DNA of 63,896 bases, the filler included, from Octopus bimaculoides (lineage: Eukaryota), in assembly GCF_001194135.2 (NCBI RefSeq). It is 4 parts of 4 records of this genome, joined end to end, with 100 filler letters (N's around TTAATTAATTAA, not from the genome) between each part and the next. Parts side by side here need not be neighbours in the genome. Positions count along the whole stretch, not along the records: positions 1 to 28,083 come from NC_068992.1; 3 more parts are not named here. One strand, given 5' to 3'. Within the stretch, counting starts at the first letter, position 1; each line of letters starts with the position of its first letter. This document shows positions 13,684 through 27,164 of the stretch, piece after piece. A model generated the notes under the pieces. That model searched no databases, had not been told where the DNA came from, and was given only the letters and a program-made list of their open reading frames with translations. A program made the translations under genes and the position numbers.

Positions 13684-14663
13684 NNNNNNNNNNNNNNNNN
13701 NNNNNNNNNNNNNNNNNNNNNNNNNNNNNNNNNNNNNNNNNNNNNNNNNNNNNNNNNNNNNNNNNNNNNNNNNNNNNNNNNNNNNNNNNNNNNNNNNNNN
13801 NNNNNNNNNNNNNNNNNNNNNNNNNNNNNNNNNNNNNNNNNNNNNNNNNNNNNNNNNNNNNNNNNNNNNNNNNNNNNNNNNNNNNNNNNNNNNNNNNNNN
13901 NNNNNNNNNNNNNNNNNNNNNNNNNNNNNNNNNNNNNNNNNNNNNNNNNNNNNNNNNNNNNNNNNNNNNNNNNNNNNNNNNNNNNNNNNNNNNNNNNNNN
14001 NNNNNNNNNNNNNNNNNNNNNNNNNNNNNNNNNNNNNNATATATATATATATATATAGTGTTATATAGAAAATTATATTGTGTTATATAGACCACTTATG
14101 ACCTGAATCACCTCCAACACCATTATTATTCAAATAGTAAATATTTTCTTTTGTTCTTTCTTTTACTTTCAGTTTGTGAAGCACGACGACCAGTGAACCT
14201 TTACCTGGGTGTTGAACACAATAGTCTTCCGAATTTATATAATTTGGGTCTTTTGAAATTTTATAAATCACTGAAATCAGAACTTAAGAGCACCAATGCT
14301 GATAAGATTCACACCCAATTAATCTTCAGTGATTTTTCAAACGAAAAAGAAAATATCAGCGAAGCATTCATCAACATCTTCAGGAAAACAATGAAAGCAG
14401 CAATTAACAATAATAAAGACTCTCAAAAGACTTTGCTGTTGTTTGTCAACTCCACCACTACTTTAACAGCAGAAATGGTCAAAGCAGCTACTATTCTGAA
14501 GGATAAAAAAATTGAGGTTTATGTTGTTGTAGAAGGTAAAAGTGAAACAGACTTTTCAAAGATTGCTAGTAAACCAGCTGAAGATCACCTCTTCATTGTG
14601 CCTTATTTCAAGAAGTTGAGTGGCCACAGGGATACAATATTACAGTCGATTTGTAAAGGTTAG
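5564..14663 (+). CDS. Probably secreted protein with two degenerate VWA domains (matrilin/collagen VI-like VWA), about 444 aa
   Basis: Hand-built join 5564-5608, 6255-6282, 10548-10613, 10842-10895, 11337-11606, 12448-12792, 13407-13442, 14173-14663 = 1335 nt. All internal exons from 10548 onward are symmetric phase 1. VWA hallmarks: C..DVMIYLDVS, VVFYFS, LYILRL, LVSSP..FVFEV; second domain VYVVV..IASKPAEDHLFIVPYFKKL..ILQSIC. The first two exons and 10842-10895 are less certain. Confidence 0.75.
6255..6282 (+). CDS. Tentative VWA gene exon 2 (MFQGSFSAS), end of signal peptide
   Basis: Strong tttcttgtgtag| acceptor and CAG|gtaaga donor; 28 nt, phase 0 to 1. Confidence 0.55.
7680..8520 (-). 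mobile_element. Chain of about four SINE copies (family B)
   Basis: Repeated body CGACCCCAGTG...CTGGTACTTAATTTATCGACCCCGAAAGGATGAAAGGCAAAGTCGACCTCGGCGGAATTTGAACTC, related to 53448-53669. Confidence 0.85.
9770..9970 (+). mobile_element. SINE family B copy with a duplicated head
   Basis: GCCGGCGAGCTGGCAGAATCGTTAGCAACG occurs twice, followed by the family B body. Confidence 0.75.
10244..10278 (+). promoter_or_regulatory. Candidate internal TATA box and Inr
   Basis: TATAAAAG at 10244-10251 with a TCAATT whose A lies 30 nt downstream (10274). Confidence 0.3.
10548..10613 (+). CDS. VWA gene exon (VPYKKAKDFENDSYVTNNPGNS)
   Basis: tttcatttcag| acceptor, CTG|gtgagt donor, 66 nt, phase 1/1. Confidence 0.7.
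10842..10895 (+). CDS. Tentative VWA gene exon (GTKEQRRLFFKTSIRNTD)
   Basis: ttaaatag| acceptor, ACG|gtacaa donor (moderate), 54 nt, phase 1/1, open frame. Confidence 0.45.
11337..11606 (+). CDS. VWA domain 1, N-terminal half
   Basis: tgtctttcag| acceptor, CCA|gtaagt donor, 270 nt; inside ORF 11300..11770. Confidence 0.9.
12448..12792 (+). CDS. VWA domain 1, C-terminal half
   Basis: ctgtttacag| acceptor, ACA|gtaagt donor, 345 nt; in frame with ORF 12522..12806. Confidence 0.9.
12945..13190 (+). mobile_element. SINE family A, 5' part
   Basis: Head GTGTGGTTAATAAGTTCGCTTCCCAACC..., then GCCTTGTGAGTGGATTTGGTAG and a (TG)n tract. Confidence 0.75.
13407..13442 (+). CDS. Inter-domain linker exon (MQVFPGYTIPKP)
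   Basis: ttcttttaatag| acceptor, CAA|gtaagt donor, 36 nt, phase 1/1. Confidence 0.8.
14173..14663 (+). CDS. VWA domain 2 exon, ending ICKG*
   Basis: ttactttcag| acceptor; ORF 14151..14663; AATAAA at 14819-14824. An AAAG|gttagt donor at 14658 overlaps the stop codon. Confidence 0.88.
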
Positions 14664-17574: not shown

Positions 17575-18290
17575 TTTTTACTGATTGCTGATGACCTTGT
17601 TCTCATAGTGGAACCACTACCAGAACTAGAGAAGGAATTTCAGGTGTGGAAGCAAGGTTTAGAATAGAAGGGCCTTAGAGTCAATGCTGCAAAAGCCAAA
17701 GTCCTAGTAAGTTGGAAGGCAAACACATCACAAACCCCTTCAGGTAGATGGCCCTGCTCGATCTGTAGAAAAGGTGTAGGTAGAAACTCCATGAGATGCA
17801 CCCAGTGTAAGCTATAGACAAATAAGAAGTGCAGCATCATGAAAGGAAGGTTAACTGGTTTATGTGCAGCAGATGTACAGGGGCAATAAACACCGCAGAT
17901 GCTCCAGAAAACTGATTCCATCACATGCCAGGCGGAGAAACTAGAAGTAGTTGATAGCTTCCACTACCTAGGTGGCCAAGTCTGTAGTGGGGGTGGATGC
18001 TTGGGGAGTATTGCCACTAGAATAAGAATAGCCTGGGCAAAGTTCAGAAAGCTCCTACCTCTACTGGTGAAAAAGGGCATCTCACTCAGAGTGAAAGGCA
18101 TGTGTGTGAACTGCCATGCTAAACAGTAGTGAAACATAAGCTGTGACTGCTGAACATATGCATAGGCTTGAAGCTAGTGTGACTCGCTGGATGTGTGCAC
18201 ACACAACAGAGTGTAAGTGCCCTGAGAGAAATGTTGAACATAAGAAACATCAGATGTGGTGTGCAAGAGAGATGACTGCGCTGGTATGTA
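17575..18290 (+). mobile_element. RTE-clade LINE ORF2 fragment, degenerate
   Basis: Translates as LIADDLVL...FQVWKQGLE*KGLRVN..K.KVLV and EKLEVVDSFHYLG...RIRIAWAKFRKLLPLL; contains stops and frameshifts. Confidence 0.85.
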
Positions 18291-21146: not shown

Positions 21147-21296
21147 CTATGGACATTCTGGTGGTATTTGGTTCTTTTGCTCTGAACAATTGCGGGCAAT
21201 ACAATCAGCGACATGTTTCATGTCTTCATCATTTTTCACAGAAGTAAACAACAGGGATCTGTCCATTCGAGTCATTATGACATCACCTTTGAAGTC
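21147..21296 (-). CDS. ureG: UreG-like terminal coding exon 6
   Basis: tttaatgtacag| acceptor, 49 codons plus [12 protein letters not shown] resembles the UreG C-terminal PFxFTxxK segment. AATAAA on the - strand at 20833-20838 and 20661-20666. Confidence 0.88.
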   Translation of the reverse strand, partial: DFKGDVIMTRMDRSLLFTSVKNDEDMKHVADCIARNCSEQKNQIPPECP

Positions 21297-22785
21297 CTGT
21301 ACATTAAAGAAAAAGACAAATAATAATAATAATAATCCTTTCTAATATAGCCACAAGGCCTGAAATAAATTTTTCGTGGGGGTGAGGGCGGGAGGCAAGT
21401 TGATTATATTGACCCCAGTGCGCAACTGGTACTTCTTTCATTGAACCTGAAAGGATGAAAGACAAGGTCAACCTCAGTGGTATTTGAACTCAGAAGGTAA
21501 AGAGGCAAACGAAATGCCACTAAGCCTTTTATCTAACACACTATGATTCTGCCATGCAACCACCTTAATAATGATATGGAGTGGCTGTGTGGTAAGTAGC
21601 TTGCTTACCAACCACATGGTTCCGGGTTCAGTCCCACTGTGTGGTACCTTGGGCAAGTGTCTTCTACTATAGCCTCTGGCCGACCAAAGCCTTGTGATGT
21701 ATGTGTGTGTATATGTTTGTCCCTCCCAACATCGCTTGACAACCGATGCTGGTGTGTTTACGTCCCTGTAACTTAGCAGTTCGGCAAAAAGATGCCGATA
21801 GAATAAGTACTAGGCTTATAAAGAATAAGTCCTGGGGTCGATTTTCTCGACTAAAAGGCGGTGCTCCAGCATGGCCACAGTCAAATGACTGAAACAAGTA
21901 AAAGAGTAAAAGAGTATATACAGACAGGTACGTAGGCAAGCGGATTGATTAACTGGCAGACTGATTTGCTTGGTGACTGAATGGGTGGTTGTTTATAGAT
22001 TACGACAAAATCTCAATGAAAACATCTTAGAGTGATTTAAATAACAGAACTAACTCTTAAAGTTTCATATACCTACCTCCATATCAAAATCCATTGCTTT
22101 TTCCAAATCCATTTTATTGACTACAAGTAACTCGCAGTAATCATTACCTGCTATTCGTTTCTTGATGATGTTTCTGCCACCTAGAAAACAGAAATTATCG
22201 TTATTATTAACATTATTATTGAGTGAGAGAGCAGTGCATGCCAAATATACAAAGCCCAGTCATGACTCACCAGGACTACCTGTGTGATAAGGGTACACCA
22301 GGCACATGCATCACAACCATATGTGCATGACACAATGACCTCAAATCAAGATAAACATCCCATGACCTTGCAGGTGGAGGTCCAGTTAGAATTTTCTTCA
22401 TGTCAAGTAGCCTATCCTGCTCAAAAAGGGTTATTTTAGGATGATGAATGAAACATCCATGTTACCAGTGGTGAATTGTTCAAACCCTATAGAATTGCTC
22501 TCCCACTACTTCTGCTCATGATCAGAGATGCACATATCATCAGCCACCAAGGGACATACTCAACTGGTTAAGATGAAGCAACTGACAAGCAAATCTGTGG
22601 TATTGAACAGAATATTTGCTGTAACCCATCTTTTAGACCAAGACAAAACGTGTACATGATTACACTTCCAATCAGTTAAGATCAAAAGCTTTGAGAGCCA
22701 CTGTCTTGTATTGCATCAGGGCATTATTATTAATTCCCACAAATTCCAGGTCTTGTATCTATAGTAGAAAGGATTATTATTATTA

Positions 22786-22834
<49 letters not shown>

Positions 22835-23851
22835 CATACTTTTTGGTTTTGGTGAGGTGGTATTGCTACATACTTTGATAACCTCTACCACTTTGATCTG
22901 TATTTTCATGCAGATTTATGTCATAAAATTATGGCCAGTCATACATGCTCATATCAGTAATAAGAATTATGATATCTTCATATTAATCATAATGGATACA
23001 AAGATATCTCATGTTTTCAAACATGGATTTAAGGATCAATTGTAATAAATATTTACAACATAAATAAATAATTGATAAAAACTAAAAACAAAAATTGGAC
23101 GAGAATCAAACCTGCAATGTCGATGACTAAAATGGTATAATCCACCAAATCTCTGTTAAAATGTGCTGCAAGACAATCCCCAGCAGATTCTAACAGAATT
23201 ATTTCAGGTTGAAAGAGTTTGGTCAAGTCTTTGATTTCTTTCAGATTTACATCAATATTCTATATATAAGAAAAAAAAAAAAAAAAAAAAAAAANNNNNN
23301 NNNNNNNNNNNNNNNNNNNNNNNNNNNNNNNNNNNNNNNNNNNNNNNNNNNNNNNNNNNNNNNNNNNNNNNNNNNNNNNNNNNNNNNNNNNNNNNNNNNN
23401 NNNNNNNNNNNNNNNNNNNNNNNNNNNNNNNNNNNNNNNNNNNNNNNNNNNNNNNNNNNNNNNNNNNNNNNNNNNNNNNNNNNNNNNNNNNNNNNNNNNN
23501 NNNNNNNTTTGAAAGTATGGGAATGATGATGATGATGGCGGTGGTGGTGGTGGTGGTGGGTAATGGTAGTGGTGATGATGATGATGATGATAACAGCAAT
23601 GAGATATACAATGTAAAAATTCTTTAAACAGATATATTTTATAAAGGAATCATTTACTTAATCATTTACTAATTAATCAAATCCACCCACACAATGAACC
23701 TGGGCCCATATCAGCTCGAAAAATTACTAATCTATATTGCTTTCTTTTAATCTTTTTTACTTGTTTCAGTCATTGGACTGCGGTCATGCTGGAGCACTAC
23801 TTTGAAGGATTTTCGTCAAATGAATCGACACCAATGCTTATTTTTAAGCTT

Positions 23852-23887
<36 letters not shown>

Positions 23888-26800
23888 CAATTTATTTTTG
23901 CCAAGCAGCTAAGTTATAGGGGACATAAACAAACCATCACCAGTTGTCAAACAGTAGTAGGGGATAAACACACACACATATGTACATATATACATATATT
24001 ATATAATACACACATACAAACACACACACATATATATAACTAATTTAGAGACGAACCACCATTCCACAACTCAGTCAATGAAGAACCTGTCCAAAATCAT
24101 GTTGTGAGACATCTACCATACAAAATACTAATCGAAAATTTTAATAATATATAATATTAAACAGTAAAATTATTATAAACATATAATGTATAAGGGCAAA
24201 TATTTTAAAAATCACAGCGAATACCATACAAAGAAACATTCATCATAAAAATATTAATTTAAAAATCAAATAAAATATCAATTAAACAATAAAAATTAAT
24301 ACAATAATATAATGTATAAAAGTACTTAAAGATGGACAAAAAGTACATAAAAGTACATAAAGATGGACAAAACGCTGCTAAGTATTTTGACGCCACCTTA
24401 ATAGTAATATTAATAATAGGATAGAAAAAGAAATACAAGTAAAAAAAAACACAACATTACTTTATTCGTGACTTCCAATGGACAACTTTCTGTTATGACA
24501 GAACGAACTTTCTCTTTTGGGATAGCATTTTGTTCAATCAAGATGTCAGCATCAACACTGAAGAATAAATGTGTATATTTATATAATAATAACAATAATA
24601 ATAATAATGAAATTATTGTGTATAGTGCTCAGGTGCACTGCAACTCATCAACGTATACAATACATAGAATTATGTACAAAAGTCAGGAAAGTGAACTGTG
24701 TATGAGACGTGATATATGTGTGCATGCGTATGAAGGTGGGGATACATCAGGTGTAGTGTTGGCGAATTTCAGGAAGCATGGAGGTTTTAAAGAATGCAAT
24801 GTCTCAGCAACTAACAACTGATGCAGATAGTTTGTTCCATGCTTCAGCAACTCTGAGTGTGGAAAAATGTTTCCGAAAGTCATTGGAGCTGTGCTTTTTT
24901 CTGACTTTGTAGGCATGCCCACATGTGTGTTAGACACATGGAGCTTAAAAAGGTGCTGAAGGTGGTTGTTGGTATGACGGTTAATAATTTTGTAGATGTT
25001 TACCAAGTCAGTTGCCAGGCGTCGGAGCTTCAATGTATCCATGCCCAGGGAAGCAAGGCATTCAGAGTTTGGTAGATGCCTGATGGAAGGTATTTGCTTG
25101 GTTGCACATCTCTGAACAGTTTCCAGGAGGTCAATGTTCTGAGCAAGATAGGGGTTCCAGACTGGTGATACAAATTCCAAGTGTGGCTGCACCATAATCA
25201 TATACAACCTTAAAAAGATAGCTGGAGAGCGGCTGACAAAGGTCTTGCTGAGTGATGCCAAGATACCCTTGGCCTTCTTGATAATTTTAGAGATGTGCTT
25301 CGTCCAGCACACATCGCTACTGACTGTTCACAAGAAGACTTTTTGATATTAGTTTTGTGGAGAGAGTACAGATGACTGTATCACCCTCTACCATCCTTTT
25401 TGTTCCCAGTACCAACATAAAAGTTTCCATTGCCTTGCAAGGGGTAGTTCCACCCAGTTTGAGAAAGTCTGTATTAGAGAATGTCCATAGGCAACCTACA
25501 TCTATTAAAAACACAGACTGCTTTGTTGTATTAATAATTCTAAAGTAATTGCAAAGTTATCTTTCTAAAACACTACTCACGTGCTGTAGAAATCATTGGT
25601 TACAACACAGATATTGCGATCTTTCAGAATCTTACACACAGCAAGGATAATGGAGGTTTTCCCTGAGCCAACTGGACCATGAATGCCCACTGTAAATGCT
25701 CGCTGAAATAGAACATAAGTTATTTTATACAATTTTGCTTTACTTTTTTGTTTGGGGAAAAACAATATCAATTACAGTTACTATGGGTTTCAGGCGGTGG
25801 GGTAGTGAAGAAGACCACAGATTTATAGTTGTCATTGTTTCAGGTGGTGGAATAGTGAGGAGGACCAGTCCACCTTAAGATATAGGGATACTGGCACATC
25901 GTTTGGTAGTCCCTGGCAACTGTTTGGTAGTCCCTGGCAACTGTTTGGTAGTCCCTGGCAACTGTTTGGTAGTCCCACAGATGTAGAGAGCCACTGCTAA
26001 TCTGTATTATGGTTGTATATGAATGAACCCTAAAGGATTGCTTTACCTGGGGGGCTTATAATGCTGTTATGATGGCCCTAGGAGAGACTTATAACTATAT
26101 TTGCTCTCATTTCACTTAGCGCAACAGTGAGGAAAACTACCAACCAAACAATTGTGAGATCAAGCCCTGCAGTTACATTGCAGTTGTTGTTGTTGCTGAG
26201 ATAATTGTTACTAAATCACAAGAATGTATAGATACAATGTTCAGTTTTGGTTTCTATATATCAAGGATATGAGAAGTGCCAATTTCACTGGATGGGCTTA
26301 CAACAAAAAAAAAAAAGGAAAATTAAATAAATTCATTTATTTGGAAATTAAAGTTATTTAAATCTACTTAAAACTCCCTGATGAATTAAAGGTTGTTGAC
26401 TCAGGTCACCACCACCATCAAATGTTTACTAGTATTCTGTATTTTATCTTATTTCACTAATAAATATCTTATCGGTCTGTTGCTGGTAGATTTCTTGTGA
26501 TGTGTGGAATTGAATTCAGAAATGCCAAACATTGAAATACTTGTAGTAAAGATTGTCTGCCAACATAACATGGCAGTCCTGGTTTAGGACTAATGTTGCT
26601 GTAATTTAGCCCCAGGAGACACTAAGTTATGGGGACATAAACACACCAGCACCAGTTGTCAAACAGTAGTGGGGGGCAAACACAAACACAAAGATACACA
26701 CACATATAAACAGACATATATATATGATGAGCTTCTATCAGTTTCCATCTACCAAATCCACTCTCAAGGTTTTGGTCGACCTCGGACTATAGTAGAAGAC

Positions 26801-27036
26801 ACTTGCCCAAGGTGCCTTGCAGTGGGACTGAACCTGGAACCATGTGGGTGGGAAGCAAGCTTCTTACCACACAGCCACACCTTCTCTTCCAGAGGAAAGT
26901 GTGTGAAGAGTGATAAATAGAAATAGAGAAATAGTAATGTAAAAGATATCAAGAACATTTTGAATTGTGTTAGGATCCTTACTTCATTCCAGTTGGTTCG
27001 GTAGAAATTCTGGCCTGGAATTCTTCTGCATGCCAT
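21147..27036 (-). CDS. ureG: UreG-like G3E/SIMIBI P-loop GTPase (divergent urease accessory protein G), spliced, 224 aa
   Basis: Hand-built join(complement) 26983-27036, 25581-25702, 24461-24557, 23112-23259, 22077-22180, 21147-21296 = 675 nt, all GT-AG, phases 0/2/0/1/0. Protein: [224 protein letters not shown]. Motif order matches eukaryotic UreG (RAFTVGIGGPVGxGKT, TND, ESGGDNL, NKxD). Confidence 0.92.
21335..21565 (-). mobile_element. SINE family B copy in UreG-like intron 5
   Basis: GACCCCAGTGCGCAACTGGTAC...GGATGAAAGACAAGGTCAACCTC body preceded by (AAT)n. Confidence 0.8.
21578..21914 (+). mobile_element. SINE family A copy with internal deletion, in UreG-like intron 5
   Basis: GGAGTGGCTGTGTGGTAAGTAGC head through the ACAAGTAAAAGAGTAAAAGAG tail. 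Confidence 0.9.
22077..22180 (-). CDS. ureG: UreG-like coding exon 5 (NKMD, G4 motif)
   Basis: tctgttttctag| acceptor, GAG|gtaggt donor, 104 nt, phase 1 to 0. Confidence 0.92.
22774..22815. repeat. (TTA)n repeat in UreG-like intron 4
   Basis: Direct reading. Confidence 0.95.
23112..23259 (-). CDS. ureG: UreG-like coding exon 4 (ESAGDCL, Walker B region)
   Basis: ttcttatatatag| acceptor, GCAG|gtttga donor, 148 nt, phase 0 to 1; absent from the ORF track. Confidence 0.92.
23745..24040 (-). mobile_element. SINE family A, 3' part, in UreG-like intron 3
   Basis: TTTTACTTGTTTCAGTCATTGGACTGCGGTCATGCTGGAGCAC matches the family tail. Confidence 0.8.
24461..24557 (-). CDS. ureG: UreG-like coding exon 3 (contains ITESCPL)
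   Basis: attcttcag| acceptor, |gtaatg donor, 97 nt, phase 2 to 0; inside ORF 24410..24595. Confidence 0.92.
24590..25560 (-). mobile_element. CR1/L2-type LINE 3' fragment in UreG-like intron 2
   Basis: ORF 24683..25312 [37 protein letters not shown]...L..LKLRRL..DL..IYKII is the typical post-RT C-terminus; (TTA)n tail near 24590. Confidence 0.88.
25581..25702 (-). CDS. ureG: UreG-like coding exon 2 (P-loop [11 protein letters not shown])
   Basis: ctatttcag| acceptor, |gtgagt donor, 122 nt; inside ORF 25577..25771. Confidence 0.95.
25901..25976. repeat. 21-bp minisatellite, 3.6 copies
   Basis: Unit GTTTGGTAGTCCCTGGCAACT at 25901, 25922 and 25943, plus a partial copy at 25964. Confidence 0.95.
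26610..26880 (-). mobile_element. SINE family A, 5' two-thirds, in UreG-like intron 1
   Basis: TCAGTTTCCATCTACCAAATCCACTC...GACACTTGCCCAAGGTGCC...CCACACAGCCAC. Confidence 0.85.
26983..27036 (-). CDS. ureG: UreG-like coding exon 1 ([18 protein letters not shown])
   Basis: ATG in ATAATAATGG context; GAA|gtaagg donor, phase 0; acceptor tttttttag at 27060 gives 23 nt of leader. Aligns with the plant/fungal segment just before RAFTVG. Confidence 0.8.
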
Positions 27037-27086
27037 TATTATATGAATGAATAACAGGTCTAAAAAAAGAGACATAAAATGTCATA

Positions 27087-27147
<61 letters not shown>

Positions 27148-27164
27148 AAGAGAGAGATAATGTC

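What the first reader, a model, noticed from the sequence alone, without database searches (positions are those of the whole stretch)
21147..27059. Complete, intron-containing UreG-like gene in an animal (octopus-like) genome
Seen: six coding exons with GT-AG introns join in frame into 224 aa, in UreG motif order ([16 protein letters not shown], TND, CP, ESxGD, NKxD). The introns carry host SINEs and a CR1/L2 LINE, so this is a nuclear gene rather than contamination. Known: UreG is the GTPase that, with UreF and UreD/H, loads nickel into urease. The system is typical of bacteria, plants, fungi and algae, patchy in invertebrates and absent from vertebrates. The NxxE-RAFTVG start resembles plant/fungal UreG rather than bacterial UreG. 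Inference: an inherited eukaryotic-type gene, pointing either to a urease/nickel pathway in this animal or to a relic of one. Only two of the six exons appear in the ORF track.
Basis: partly seen in the sequence, partly recalled or inferred. Interest (0 to 1): 0.9.

Follow-up and report, generated by a model that had tools for sequence, protein, structure and literature searches.

The report
Octopus UreG-derived GTPase, nickel site lost
The six-exon gene is real and already annotated as "UreG" in Octopus bimaculoides, but in octopuses, cuttlefish and squid-like relatives this inherited animal gene has lost the nickel-binding histidine that defines UreG, so it probably no longer loads nickel into urease in the usual way.

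Summary
Six minus-strand exons with GT-AG introns join into 224 aa, identical to RefSeq XP_014773062.1 ("urease accessory protein UreG", O. bimaculoides). The assembly gap lies in intron 3 and hides no exon.

The gene descends vertically from the animal UreG. All five intron positions and phases match those of a coral UreG gene, and it groups with animal sequences.

It is not a canonical UreG:
- It scores 138.7 bits on TIGR00101, below the 204.2 cut-off.
- It is 36-48% identical to any UreG, while canonical UreGs from animals, fungi, algae and bacteria share 56-78%.
- They also lack the His-rich N-terminus and the PRKGGPGIT loop.

The P-loop, ExxG, NKxD and the UreG fold are kept. dN/dS is 0.1-0.2 in deep comparisons and 0.4-0.6 between two Octopus species.

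Canonical animal UreG genes lie next to the urease gene. No urease lies within 10 kb of three cephalopod loci. An animal-urease probe listed 22 gastropod and bivalve species and no cephalopod.

Best reading: a repurposed UreG-derived GTPase. Whether cephalopods lack urease genome-wide remains untested.

The parts
26983..27036 (-). Exon 1. It encodes [18 protein letters not shown] (aa 1-18); the ATG is at 27034-27036 and the donor is GTAAGG. An alternative in-frame ATG 39 nt upstream (27075) gives the 237-aa UniProt model A0A0L8HEB2.
   Evidence: The orthologues start at the equivalent Met. The His-rich N-terminal region of canonical animal UreGs is absent.
25581..25702 (-). Exon 2. It carries the [17 protein letters not shown]-loop (G1) through TNDFYS, aa 19-59, and ends in phase 2.
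   Evidence: The intron positions on both sides are shared with the coral UreG gene; the scallop has both and the crinoid the upstream one.
24461..24557 (-). Exon 3. It carries the remnant of the metal motif, Cys84-Pro85-Leu86; canonical UreG has Cys-Pro-His here.
23295..23507 (.). Assembly gap inside intron 3, 35 nt upstream of exon 4. It corresponds to about 21 nt of polypyrimidine tract in O. sinensis.
23112..23259 (-). Exon 4. It carries switch II E115-S-A-G-D-C120-L (canonical ESGGDNL) through VIDIAG, and ends in phase 1.
22077..22180 (-). Exon 5. It carries [13 protein letters not shown], which replaces the canonical GDKIPRKGGPGIT, and the G4 motif N162-K-M-D165.
21147..21296 (-). Exon 6. 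It encodes the C-terminal helix region and the cephalopod-conserved tail IPPECP. The stop codon TAG is at 21147-21149.
21573..21900 (+). SINE-like interspersed repeat in intron 5, with a B-box-like GGTTCAGTCCCAC at 21625.
26560..26886 (-). A copy of the same SINE-like repeat in intron 1, inverted relative to the intron 5 copy.
24683..25312 (-). A 209-aa ORF in intron 2, probably the tail of a retrotransposon ORF. Its class was not verified.
   Evidence: the ORF; no Pfam hit.

Best explanation
This is the intact nuclear gene of Octopus bimaculoides that RefSeq calls UreG. It descends vertically from the ancestral animal UreG. In the cephalopods sampled (octopods and decapods) it has been remodelled into a UreG-derived G3E GTPase that has lost the defining nickel site. 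It is probably no longer a classical urease-maturation factor.

Shown here:
- The gene model, the orthologues, and the shared intron positions.
- Retention of the nucleotide-binding machinery: P-loop GPVGSGKT, Mg-binding E115xxG118, guanine-specific NKMD, and the UreG fold.
- Replacement in every cephalopod sequence of the CPH histidine (H to L/A/M) and of its switch II hydrogen-bond partner (N to C).
- Loss of the His-rich N-terminus and of the PRKGGPGIT loop.
- Fixation of 11 new residues across cephalopods at positions invariant in other UreGs.
- dN/dS below 1.
- Spliced transcripts in decapods.
- No linkage to urease, which canonical animal UreGs have.

Inferred mechanism:
- The protein still binds and hydrolyses GTP and cycles between monomer and dimer, as SIMIBI/G3E GTPases do.
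- The Cys2His2 square-planar nickel site at the dimer interface cannot form.
- The retained Cys84 and the newly fixed Cys120, which sits where Asn103 contacts the CPH motif in H. pylori UreG, may form an all-cysteine interface site. Such a site would suit a thiophilic metal or a different client.
- The client is unknown. Cephalopods may have lost urease.
For: Gene model and identity.

Family and fold:
- Pfam cobW at 2e-19.
- TIGR00101 ureG is the best family at 138.7 bits, below its 204.2 cut-off; HypB scores 44.8.
- The best PDB sequence matches are UreG 4hi0_E and 5xkt_A.
- The AF2 model has pLDDT 82. Its best structural matches are 5xkt_A (TM 0.87) and 4hi0_E (TM 0.85).

Vertical descent:
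- Downstream exon sizes are 122/97/148/104 nt in octopus and 125/97/148/104 nt in coral, with the same phases. Scallop and crinoid share subsets of these introns.
- The NJ tree places non-animal sequences apart from animals plus cephalopods with 94% support. Cephalopods are monophyletic at 100%.

Divergence:
- Identity to any canonical UreG is 36-48%, against 56-78% among canonical UreGs across kingdoms.
- In an exhaustive search of 1.84 billion representatives, the cephalopod cluster scores 385 bits and the next hit 153 bits at 40% identity.
- Of 92 columns invariant in 17 canonical UreGs, 25 are changed in all six cephalopods. Eleven of these are fixed to one new residue, including G82E, G117A, N120C, P146I, G149R and G150I.

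Functional meaning of the lost residues (PMC3792862):
- The CPH motif is invariant.
- C66A or H68A abolishes nickel-dependent dimerisation, and the equivalent substitutions abolish urease maturation.
- ESGGDNL is described as 'totally invariant'.
- Asn103 hydrogen-bonds the CPH His.

Constraint and expression:
- dN/dS is 0.13 for Octopus-Argonauta, 0.18-0.22 for Sepia against another decapod, and 0.21 within Sepia.
- Intronless transcript contigs carry the exact decapod proteins: at least 24 contigs from separate Logan assemblies (25 index blocks) for P0003, and 6 for P0002.

Urease context:
- The urease gene is adjacent to UreG in scallop, crinoid and coral; in coral UreD is adjacent too.
- No urease similarity was found within 10 kb upstream or downstream in O. 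sinensis, Sepia pharaonis or Argonauta, nor anywhere in the window. Positive controls scored 1e-12 to 1e-38.
- An animal-urease probe returned 22 named gastropod and bivalve species and no cephalopod. Five cephalopod proteomes are in that database.
Against: - Absence of urease, UreD, UreF or a second canonical UreG in cephalopod genomes was not tested genome-wide. The urease list was cut at 748 bits, where plant ureases already mix with molluscs. A fast-evolving cephalopod urease would therefore be missed.
- Two unnamed urease transcripts, P0430 and P0450, could not be assigned to a taxon.
- 10 kb of flank is short for cephalopod genomes, and the window itself shows only 1 kb upstream of exon 1.
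- dN/dS between O. bimaculoides and O. sinensis is 0.42-0.61, from 22 amino-acid and 38 nucleotide differences. Constraint within Octopus may therefore be weak.
- No transcript assembly carrying the exact Octopus protein was found. Expression in this species rests on the RefSeq model only.
- Cys84 is retained, so some metal binding, even of nickel, cannot be excluded.
- No coordinates of the model were available, so the Cys84-Cys120 proximity is inferred from the H. pylori structure description and was not measured.
Confidence: 0.62

Rival explanations
1. It is still a working urease accessory GTPase. Cephalopods keep a urease, possibly divergent or unannotated, and this protein delivers nickel to it through a modified site.
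For: - UreG is clearly the closest family and fold.
- Cys84-Pro85, the P-loop, ExxG and NKxD are retained.
- The gene is under purifying selection.
- Urease is widespread in other molluscs.
- The urease search could have missed a divergent or unannotated cephalopod urease, because the list was cut at 748 bits. Two unnamed urease transcripts remain unassigned.
Against: - The nickel-ligand His is absent in all six cephalopod sequences. H68A alone abolishes nickel-dependent dimerisation in H. pylori UreG.
- Switch II, the PRKGGPGIT loop and the His-rich tail are also changed.
- The score is below the equivalog cut-off.
- No urease lies next to the gene, unlike in scallop, crinoid and coral.
- None of five cephalopod proteomes gave a urease among the 120 best hits.
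Confidence: 0.22
2. It is a divergent paralogue. A canonical UreG, paired with urease, still exists elsewhere in cephalopod genomes, and this copy was freed to diverge.
For: - The gene is not next to urease, as a relocated duplicate would not be.
- The homologue search with the divergent query listed only 9 animal canonical UreGs. It was therefore far from exhaustive and could have missed a cephalopod one.
Against: - No cephalopod urease was seen, and no cephalopod canonical UreG was seen.
- The intron-exon structure is that of the ancestral gene, so it is not a retrocopy.
Confidence: 0.08
3. It is a decaying relic: an open frame kept by chance, or a transcribed pseudogene, left after loss of the urease pathway.
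For: - Key catalytic-site residues are lost.
- dN/dS is 0.42-0.61 between two Octopus species.
- No transcript assembly carrying the exact Octopus protein was retrieved.
Against: - The frame is intact and the splice sites are conserved in six sequences spanning octopods and decapods.
- Eleven lineage-specific replacements are fixed identically across the clade.
- Deep dN/dS is 0.10-0.22.
- Even the Octopus pair has fewer non-synonymous changes than my hand estimate for neutrality: 22 amino-acid differences among 38 nucleotide differences, where I assumed roughly three quarters would be non-synonymous (counts; the expectation is not a tool result).
- Transcripts are abundant in decapods.
Confidence: 0.05
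4. It is bacterial contamination or a recent horizontal transfer.
For: UreG is mostly a bacterial gene, and many top hits are Planctomycetota at about 40% identity.
Against: - It has five spliceosomal introns at positions shared with cnidarian, mollusc and echinoderm UreG genes.
- Host SINE copies lie in its introns.
- It lies on a 68-Mb chromosome.
- Orthologues exist in four other cephalopod genomes.
- It falls on the animal side of the tree.
Confidence: 0.01

Closest known systems
Canonical UreG: H. pylori 4HI0, K. pneumoniae 5XKT, and animal UreGs such as that of Pecten maximus
   Same: - Same G3E/SIMIBI GTPase fold (TM 0.85-0.87).
- Same order of G1, switch II (ExxG) and NKxD motifs.
- Cys-Pro of the metal motif is retained.
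- Same intron positions as animal UreG genes.
- It is the best-scoring family in NCBIfam and the PDB.

   Different: - The His of CPH is replaced by Leu, Ala or Met.
- ESGGDNL has become ESAGDCL.
- GDKIPRKGGPGIT has become G[RKHN][NK][ILV]I[KRH]KRI[AEK]GN[DN].
- ETGG has become [IV][TV]E[SG].
- There is no His-rich N-terminus.
- There is a new conserved C-terminal PP[EQ]CP in five of six sequences.
- Identity is 36-48%, against 56-78% among canonical UreGs.
- The score is below the TIGR00101 cut-off.
- The gene is not adjacent to urease.

HypB (hydrogenase nickel GTPase; e.g. M. jannaschii 2HF8, H. pylori 4LPS)
   Same: - It belongs to the same G3E family and gives the second-best structural matches.
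- From my own knowledge, not tested here: HypB builds its interface metal site from a Cys/His motif plus a cysteine in the switch II region. That resembles the Cys84 plus Cys120 arrangement proposed here.
   Different: - It scores only 44.8 bits against a 121.2 cut-off.
- The switch II Cys is at a different offset: +5 from the Glu here, which I recall as +7 in HypB.
- Animals have no [NiFe]-hydrogenase client.
COG0523 / CobW-like GTPases (animal ZNG1/CBWD zinc metallochaperones) and MeaB/MMAA
   Same: They are G3E GTPases that act as GTP-dependent metallochaperones or cofactor gatekeepers in animals. They show that such GTPases can serve clients other than nickel enzymes.
   Different: - Sequence similarity is negligible: CobW E = 0.02, ZigA E = 0.021, MeaB E = 0.18-0.25.
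- There is no CxCC motif and no C-terminal CobW domain.

Membership tests
UreG (NCBIfam TIGR00101 equivalog) | The whole-protein score reaches the curated equivalog cut-off of 204.2 bits. | tested here: not met
   The score is 138.7 bits at E = 2e-40. UreG is still the best family by far.
UreG | G3E/SIMIBI P-loop GTPase fold with G1 GxxGxGK[ST], switch II ExxG and G4 NKxD. | tested here: met
   GPVGSGKT 27-34, E115-S-A-G118 and N162-K-M-D165 are present, and these residues are invariant in alignment A1. Pfam PF02492 matches at 2e-19. The AF2 model has pLDDT 82 and matches 5xkt_A and 4hi0_E with TM 0.87 and 0.85.
UreG | [quoted passage not shown] Both Cys and His are required for nickel-dependent dimerisation and urease maturation. 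| tested here: not met
   The octopus has Cys84-Pro85-Leu86. The six cephalopod sequences have L, L, A, M, M, M at the His position. The requirement for the His comes from PMC3792862.
UreG | A 'totally invariant' switch II motif ESGGDNL, in which Asn103 hydrogen-bonds the CPH His. | tested here: not met
   All six cephalopods have ESAGDCL, that is G117A and N120C. The motif is described in PMC3792862. The ExxG core itself is kept.
UreG | Genomic or functional partnership with urease, UreD/H and UreF. | tested here: inconclusive
   - Canonical animal UreGs are adjacent to urease, and in coral to UreD as well.
- No urease similarity was found within 10 kb of the O. sinensis, S. pharaonis and A. 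hians loci, or in the window.
- No cephalopod appeared among the 120 best urease hits, which included 22 other mollusc species.
- Whole genomes could not be searched. UreD and UreF were not probed.
UreG | GTP- and nickel-dependent dimerisation, and activation of apo-urease. | not testable with these tools
   This is biochemistry. See the decisive next steps.
Eukaryote-type UreG (animal, plant, fungal) | A His-rich N-terminal extension before the RAFTVG core. | tested here: not met
   Seven of the eight animal UreGs in the alignment, and the alga, carry H-rich stretches such as HGHTHEH. The tardigrade isoform X2 (P0004) does not. The cephalopod proteins have only 16-21 residues before RAFTVG, and none of the six has a His-rich stretch.
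HypB (TIGR00073) | The score reaches the 121.2-bit cut-off, and the HypB metal motifs are present. | tested here: not met
   The score is 44.8 bits. Structural similarity is lower than to UreG.
COG0523 / CobW / ZNG1 | A CxCC metal motif and a C-terminal CobW domain. | tested here: not met
   There is no CxCC in the 224-aa sequence. CobW scores E = 0.02 and ZigA E = 0.021, far below their cut-offs.

The most novel reading that the evidence does not exclude
Coleoid cephalopods lost urease but kept the ancestral UreG gene for hundreds of millions of years (the timescale is from my own knowledge). They rebuilt its dimer-interface Cys2His2 nickel site into an all-cysteine site (Cys84 plus Cys120 from each protomer), so that the GTPase now serves a different metal or client. 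This would be a natural example of a dedicated metallochaperone being retargeted after its enzyme disappeared.
Probability: 0.35. Interest if true: 0.65.

Novelty: new variant of a known kind. Interest (0 to 1): 0.45.

Why it matters
UreG is considered a single-purpose chaperone. Its Cys-Pro-His and ESGGDNL motifs are described as invariant, and it co-occurs with urease.

A clade in which the gene survives under selection, but with the nickel histidine and its switch II partner replaced together, is a natural experiment. It bears on how G3E metallochaperones change metal or client specificity.

It also shows that the database name "urease accessory protein UreG" for cephalopod proteins should not be read as evidence of nickel or urea metabolism in these animals.

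The gene itself is already annotated, so the new content is the divergence and its context, not the gene's existence.

Tried and rejected
1. A 271-aa N-terminal urease probe was uninformative. All listed hits were 471 aa or shorter, and even the crinoid's own 852-aa urease was missing. I infer that the tool drops targets longer than about 1.75 times the query. A 580-aa chimeric probe then worked.
2. Brute-force reconstruction of the coral UreD coding sequence, intended as a UreD probe, was ambiguous (77 exon chains).
3. Six literature searches found nothing on a cephalopod UreG or urease. The single 'urease' mention in an Octopus ocellatus paper is generic.
4. Pfam on the intron 2 ORF and on a second retroelement-like ORF gave no support for a LINE class.
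5. ARAGORN found no tRNA in the SINE-like repeats.
6. The GC content of the unassigned urease transcript P0430 did not settle its taxon.
7. The apparent multi-copy family in O. vulgaris, nine 'members' of the 90% cluster, is a clustering artefact. It arises from one chimeric gene model, CAI9731205.1, that joins a transposon-like ORF, EGF-like repeats and the UreG-like gene.
8. Contamination or HGT, and the pseudogene reading, were rejected (see the rival explanations).
9. A jack bean urease sequence recalled from memory was used only as a tBLASTn probe. It was validated by strong hits on the scallop, crinoid and coral urease exons.
Full report
**1. Observation**

The gene lies on the minus strand. 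Reading the sequence and translating each candidate exon gave six exons:
- exon 1: 26983-27036
- exon 2: 25581-25702
- exon 3: 24461-24557
- exon 4: 23112-23259
- exon 5: 22077-22180
- exon 6: 21147-21296

Every intron starts with GT and ends with AG. The intron phases are 0, 2, 0, 1, 0. The joined CDS is 675 nt and encodes 224 aa.

An exact look-up shows this protein is XP_014773062.1, "urease accessory protein UreG [Octopus bimaculoides]", also present in EukProt. The locus is GCA_001194135.2, chromosome CM046612.1, at about 49.5 Mb. So the gene model is correct and already annotated.

**2. The assembly gap**

The N run 23295-23507 lies in intron 3, 35 nt upstream of the exon 4 acceptor. A BLASTN comparison of the O. 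bimaculoides gene with the gap-free O. sinensis orthologue (L015) shows the two flanks are colinear. Only 21 nt, part of a polypyrimidine tract, lie between them in O. sinensis.

O. sinensis and Sepia pharaonis have the same exon 3/exon 4 junction. In Argonauta hians, exons 3 and 4 are one continuous open frame: the intron is lost, with a 9-nt deletion. The protein also aligns without a break to solved UreG structures across this junction. No exon is hidden in the gap.

**3. Family**

- Pfam gives only the general CobW/HypB/UreG domain, at 2e-19.
- NCBIfam puts UreG (TIGR00101) first at 138.7 bits, and HypB far behind at 44.8. The UreG score is well below the curated cut-off of 204.2.
- The best PDB sequence matches are H. 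pylori and K. pneumoniae UreG.
- An AlphaFold2 model has mean pLDDT 82.1 and pTM 0.83. It superposes best on 5xkt_A and 4hi0_E (TM 0.87 and 0.85 by target length), then on HypB and MeaB/MMAA.

**4. Relatives**

The closest proteins are cephalopod only:
- O. sinensis: 90% identity
- Argonauta hians: 77-78%
- Sepia pharaonis and a Sepia transcript cluster: 63%
- another decapod transcript: 63%

Canonical UreGs of tardigrades, a scorpion, a spider, a scallop, a snail, a coral and a crinoid are only 40-49% identical to the octopus protein.

An exhaustive HMMER scan of 1.84 billion cluster representatives shows a cliff. The cephalopod cluster scores 385 bits. The next protein scores 153 bits at 40% identity.

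In a common alignment, canonical UreGs from animals, a fungus, an alga and bacteria are 56-78% identical to one another. Every cephalopod sequence is 36-48% identical to every canonical one.

**5. Vertical descent**

I derived exact exon structures for six other UreG genes. The five octopus introns are at CDS positions 54, 176, 273, 421 and 525, with phases 0, 2, 0, 1, 0. They coincide with introns of the coral Pocillopora gene at 216, 341, 438, 586 and 690, which have the same phases. The intervening exon sizes are 125/97/148/104 nt in coral and 122/97/148/104 nt in octopus.

Scallop and crinoid share subsets of these introns. Sepia and O. sinensis share all five.

Animal-specific residues are present in the octopus protein, such as the Cys in ICVVTND and the block KDLTKxFQPEI.

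A neighbour-joining tree with 200 bootstraps gives these results:
- Cephalopods are monophyletic at 100%, with octopods and decapods as sister groups.
- The split between fungus, alga and bacteria on one side and animals plus cephalopods on the other has 94% support.

Contamination and horizontal transfer are excluded. Planctomycetota and other bacteria have it too.

**6. What changed**

Of 92 alignment columns invariant in 17 canonical UreGs:
- 44 are kept in all six cephalopod sequences
- 25 are changed in all six
- 23 are changed in some

Eleven of the all-changed columns are fixed to one new residue across the clade. Ten are substitutions (L36I, G82E, G117A, N120C, Y135L, P146I, G149R, G150I, I153N, M184T), the last is G188R, and a twelfth column in the script's list is a gap rather than a residue.

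Motif by motif:

| Canonical UreG | Cephalopods |
|---|---|
| [11 protein letters not shown] | GI[HQF]GP[VP]GSGKT |
| ETGGCPH | [IV][TV]E[SG]CP[LAM] |
| ESGGDNL | ESAGDCL |
| GDK[IV]PRKGGPGIT | G[RKHN][NK][ILV]I[KRH]KRI[AEK]GN[DN] |
| His-rich N-terminal tail | absent |
| (none) | new C-terminal PP[EQ]CP, in five of six sequences |

The G1 P-loop, the Mg-binding ExxG, the NKxD guanine motif and Cys-Pro of the metal motif are invariant.

The structural paper on H. pylori UreG (PMC3792862) states the following:
- Cys66-Pro67-His68 is invariant and sits at the dimer interface.
- C66A or H68A abolishes nickel- and GTP-dependent dimerisation. The equivalent substitutions abolish urease maturation.
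- 98-ESGGDNL-104 is "totally invariant".
- The motif's histidine hydrogen-bonds Asn103.

In cephalopods both partners of that hydrogen bond are replaced: His to Leu/Ala/Met, and Asn to Cys.

**7. Is it a live gene?**

dN/dS estimates:

| Comparison | dN/dS | Note |
|---|---|---|
| O. bimaculoides vs Argonauta | 0.13 | dS about 1.1 |
| Octopus vs decapods | 0.10-0.12 | dS saturated |
| Sepia vs the other decapod | 0.18-0.22 | |
| Two Sepia sequences | 0.21 | |
| O. bimaculoides vs O. sinensis | 0.42-0.61 | 22 amino-acid and 38 nucleotide differences |

By my own hand estimate, which assumes roughly three quarters of changes would be non-synonymous under neutrality, the Octopus pair is still below that expectation. 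That estimate is not a tool result. Even so, the values suggest weaker constraint within Octopus.

Intronless contigs from Logan run assemblies encode the exact decapod proteins. There are at least 24 contigs from separate runs for one protein, and 6 for the representative of the other. This shows splicing and expression in decapods.

No such contig carries the exact Octopus protein. Expression in this species was therefore not shown here.

**8. Urease context**

Fetching the genomic surroundings of canonical animal UreGs gave an unexpected result.
- In the scallop Pecten maximus, UreG lies head-to-head with the single-chain urease gene, about 5.5 kb away.
- In the crinoid Anneissia japonica the same arrangement holds, about 2.4 kb away.
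- In the coral Pocillopora damicornis the order is urease, Tctex-1, UreG, UreD, all within 18 kb.

The cephalopod loci look different.
- Argonauta has a 522-aa neighbour with no Pfam hit.
- O. sinensis has no called neighbour within 10 kb.
- Sepia has an SPRTN-like gene downstream.
- tBLASTn with four urease probes found nothing better than E = 0.19 in these three loci or in the window. The scallop and crinoid controls gave 1e-12 to 1e-38.

A 580-aa probe assembled from crinoid and coral urease exons was searched against the protein collection. The leading hits, down to about 765 bits, were almost all animal ureases. They included 22 named gastropod and bivalve species. None came from the five cephalopod species whose proteins are in the same collection.

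Fourteen unnamed hits were examined. Twelve resolved to corals, mussels, clams, an ark clam, an urchin and a sea cucumber. Two remain unassigned: P0430 and P0450.

This argues that annotated cephalopod proteomes lack a canonical urease. The evidence has limits:
- The list was cut at 748 bits, where plant sequences already intermix with molluscs.
- Genomes themselves could not be searched.
- UreD and UreF were not probed.

**9. Interpretation**

The most likely reading (about 0.6) is a UreG-derived G3E GTPase that has been repurposed. It probably keeps the GTP-driven monomer-dimer switch. It can no longer build the Cys2His2 nickel site.

The Asn-to-Cys change sits exactly where switch II touches the metal motif. 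It is fixed in all cephalopods. This suggests a remodelled, cysteine-only interface site made of Cys84 and Cys120 from each protomer. That is an inference from the H. pylori structure description. It was not measured on coordinates, and the client is unknown.

The rivals are:
- a still-functional urease chaperone with an undetected urease (about 0.2)
- a divergent paralogue alongside a canonical copy (about 0.08)
- a decaying relic (about 0.05)
- contamination or HGT (about 0.01)

**10. Novelty**

The gene is already in RefSeq and UniProt under the name UreG. In the searchable literature I found nothing on cephalopod UreG or urease.

A 2009 survey noted urease in Aplysia and sea urchin and regarded nickel use as rare in animals (PMC2667541).

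The existence of the gene is known. Three things appear to be undescribed: its status as a strongly derived variant lacking the defining nickel ligand, the loss of linkage to urease, and the conserved urease-UreG linkage in other animals.

Noticed in passing
L013:1-23904 (Pecten maximus); L014:1-19270 (Anneissia japonica); L017:1-17676 (Pocillopora damicornis): Canonical animal UreG genes are physically linked to the single-chain urease gene. They lie head-to-head in scallop (about 5.5 kb apart) and crinoid (about 2.4 kb). In coral the order is urease, Tctex-1, UreG, UreD. This looks like a conserved urease-pathway gene cluster across Cnidaria, Mollusca and Echinodermata. I found no description of it in the searchable literature.
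   Followed up: partly
L017:1-6987: The coral urease gene model (989 aa) carries a UreD Pfam hit in front of the urease gamma, beta and alpha domains. A separate UreD gene lies downstream of UreG. This is either a UreD-urease fusion, two UreD copies, or a merged annotation.
   Followed up: no
L012:11737-11972 (Argonauta hians): Argonauta has lost intron 3 of the UreG-like gene. Exons 3 and 4 are fused, with a 9-nt (3-aa) deletion at the junction. The other four introns are kept at identical positions.
   Followed up: yes
Protein P0130 (O. vulgaris CAI9731205.1, 1261 aa): This is a chimeric gene model that joins a transposon-like ORF, repeated EGF/cysteine-rich modules and the UreG-like protein. 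It drags eight unrelated 274-301-aa 'hypothetical proteins' into the same 90% cluster. As a result the Octopus UreG-like proteins are hidden behind an unrelated cluster representative in homology searches.
   Followed up: yes
window 11300-14663 (+): Three ORF-sized exons have von Willebrand factor A domain similarity (Pfam VWA, best E = 3e-6). They belong to a neighbouring gene that converges on the 3' end of the UreG-like gene.
   Followed up: partly
window 12999, 19399, 20355, 21625, 26820: There are five copies of one SINE-like repeat with a B-box-like GGTTCAGTCCCAC, against 0.36 expected by chance. ARAGORN calls no tRNA in them.
   Followed up: partly
window 24683-25312 (-) and 17899-18129 (+): These are retroelement-like ORFs with LxxVQxxAxR and YLG-type motifs typical of non-LTR element tails.
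   Followed up: partly
L018 (Logan SRR32924703), protein P0430; also P0450: Two full-length animal-type urease transcripts could not be assigned to a taxon. P0430 is 73% identical to the Lingula urease. P0450 is 70.5% identical to the horseshoe-crab urease. P0430 occurs in a single run. Cephalopod origin, for example Nautilus, cannot be excluded.
   Followed up: partly
window 27085-27150; 22775-22835; 23535-23590; many (CA)n/(TA)n tracts in 150-4000: Microsatellites are dense: (GA)n just upstream of exon 1, (ATT)n in intron 4, and (GGT/GAT)n next to the gap. Six further assembly gaps lie in the piece.
   Followed up: no
Tool behaviour: the search for homologous proteins listed no target longer than about 1.75 times the query: at most 380 aa for a 224-aa query, and at most 471 aa for a 271-aa query. 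Partial queries therefore cannot retrieve full-length multidomain homologues.
   Followed up: yes
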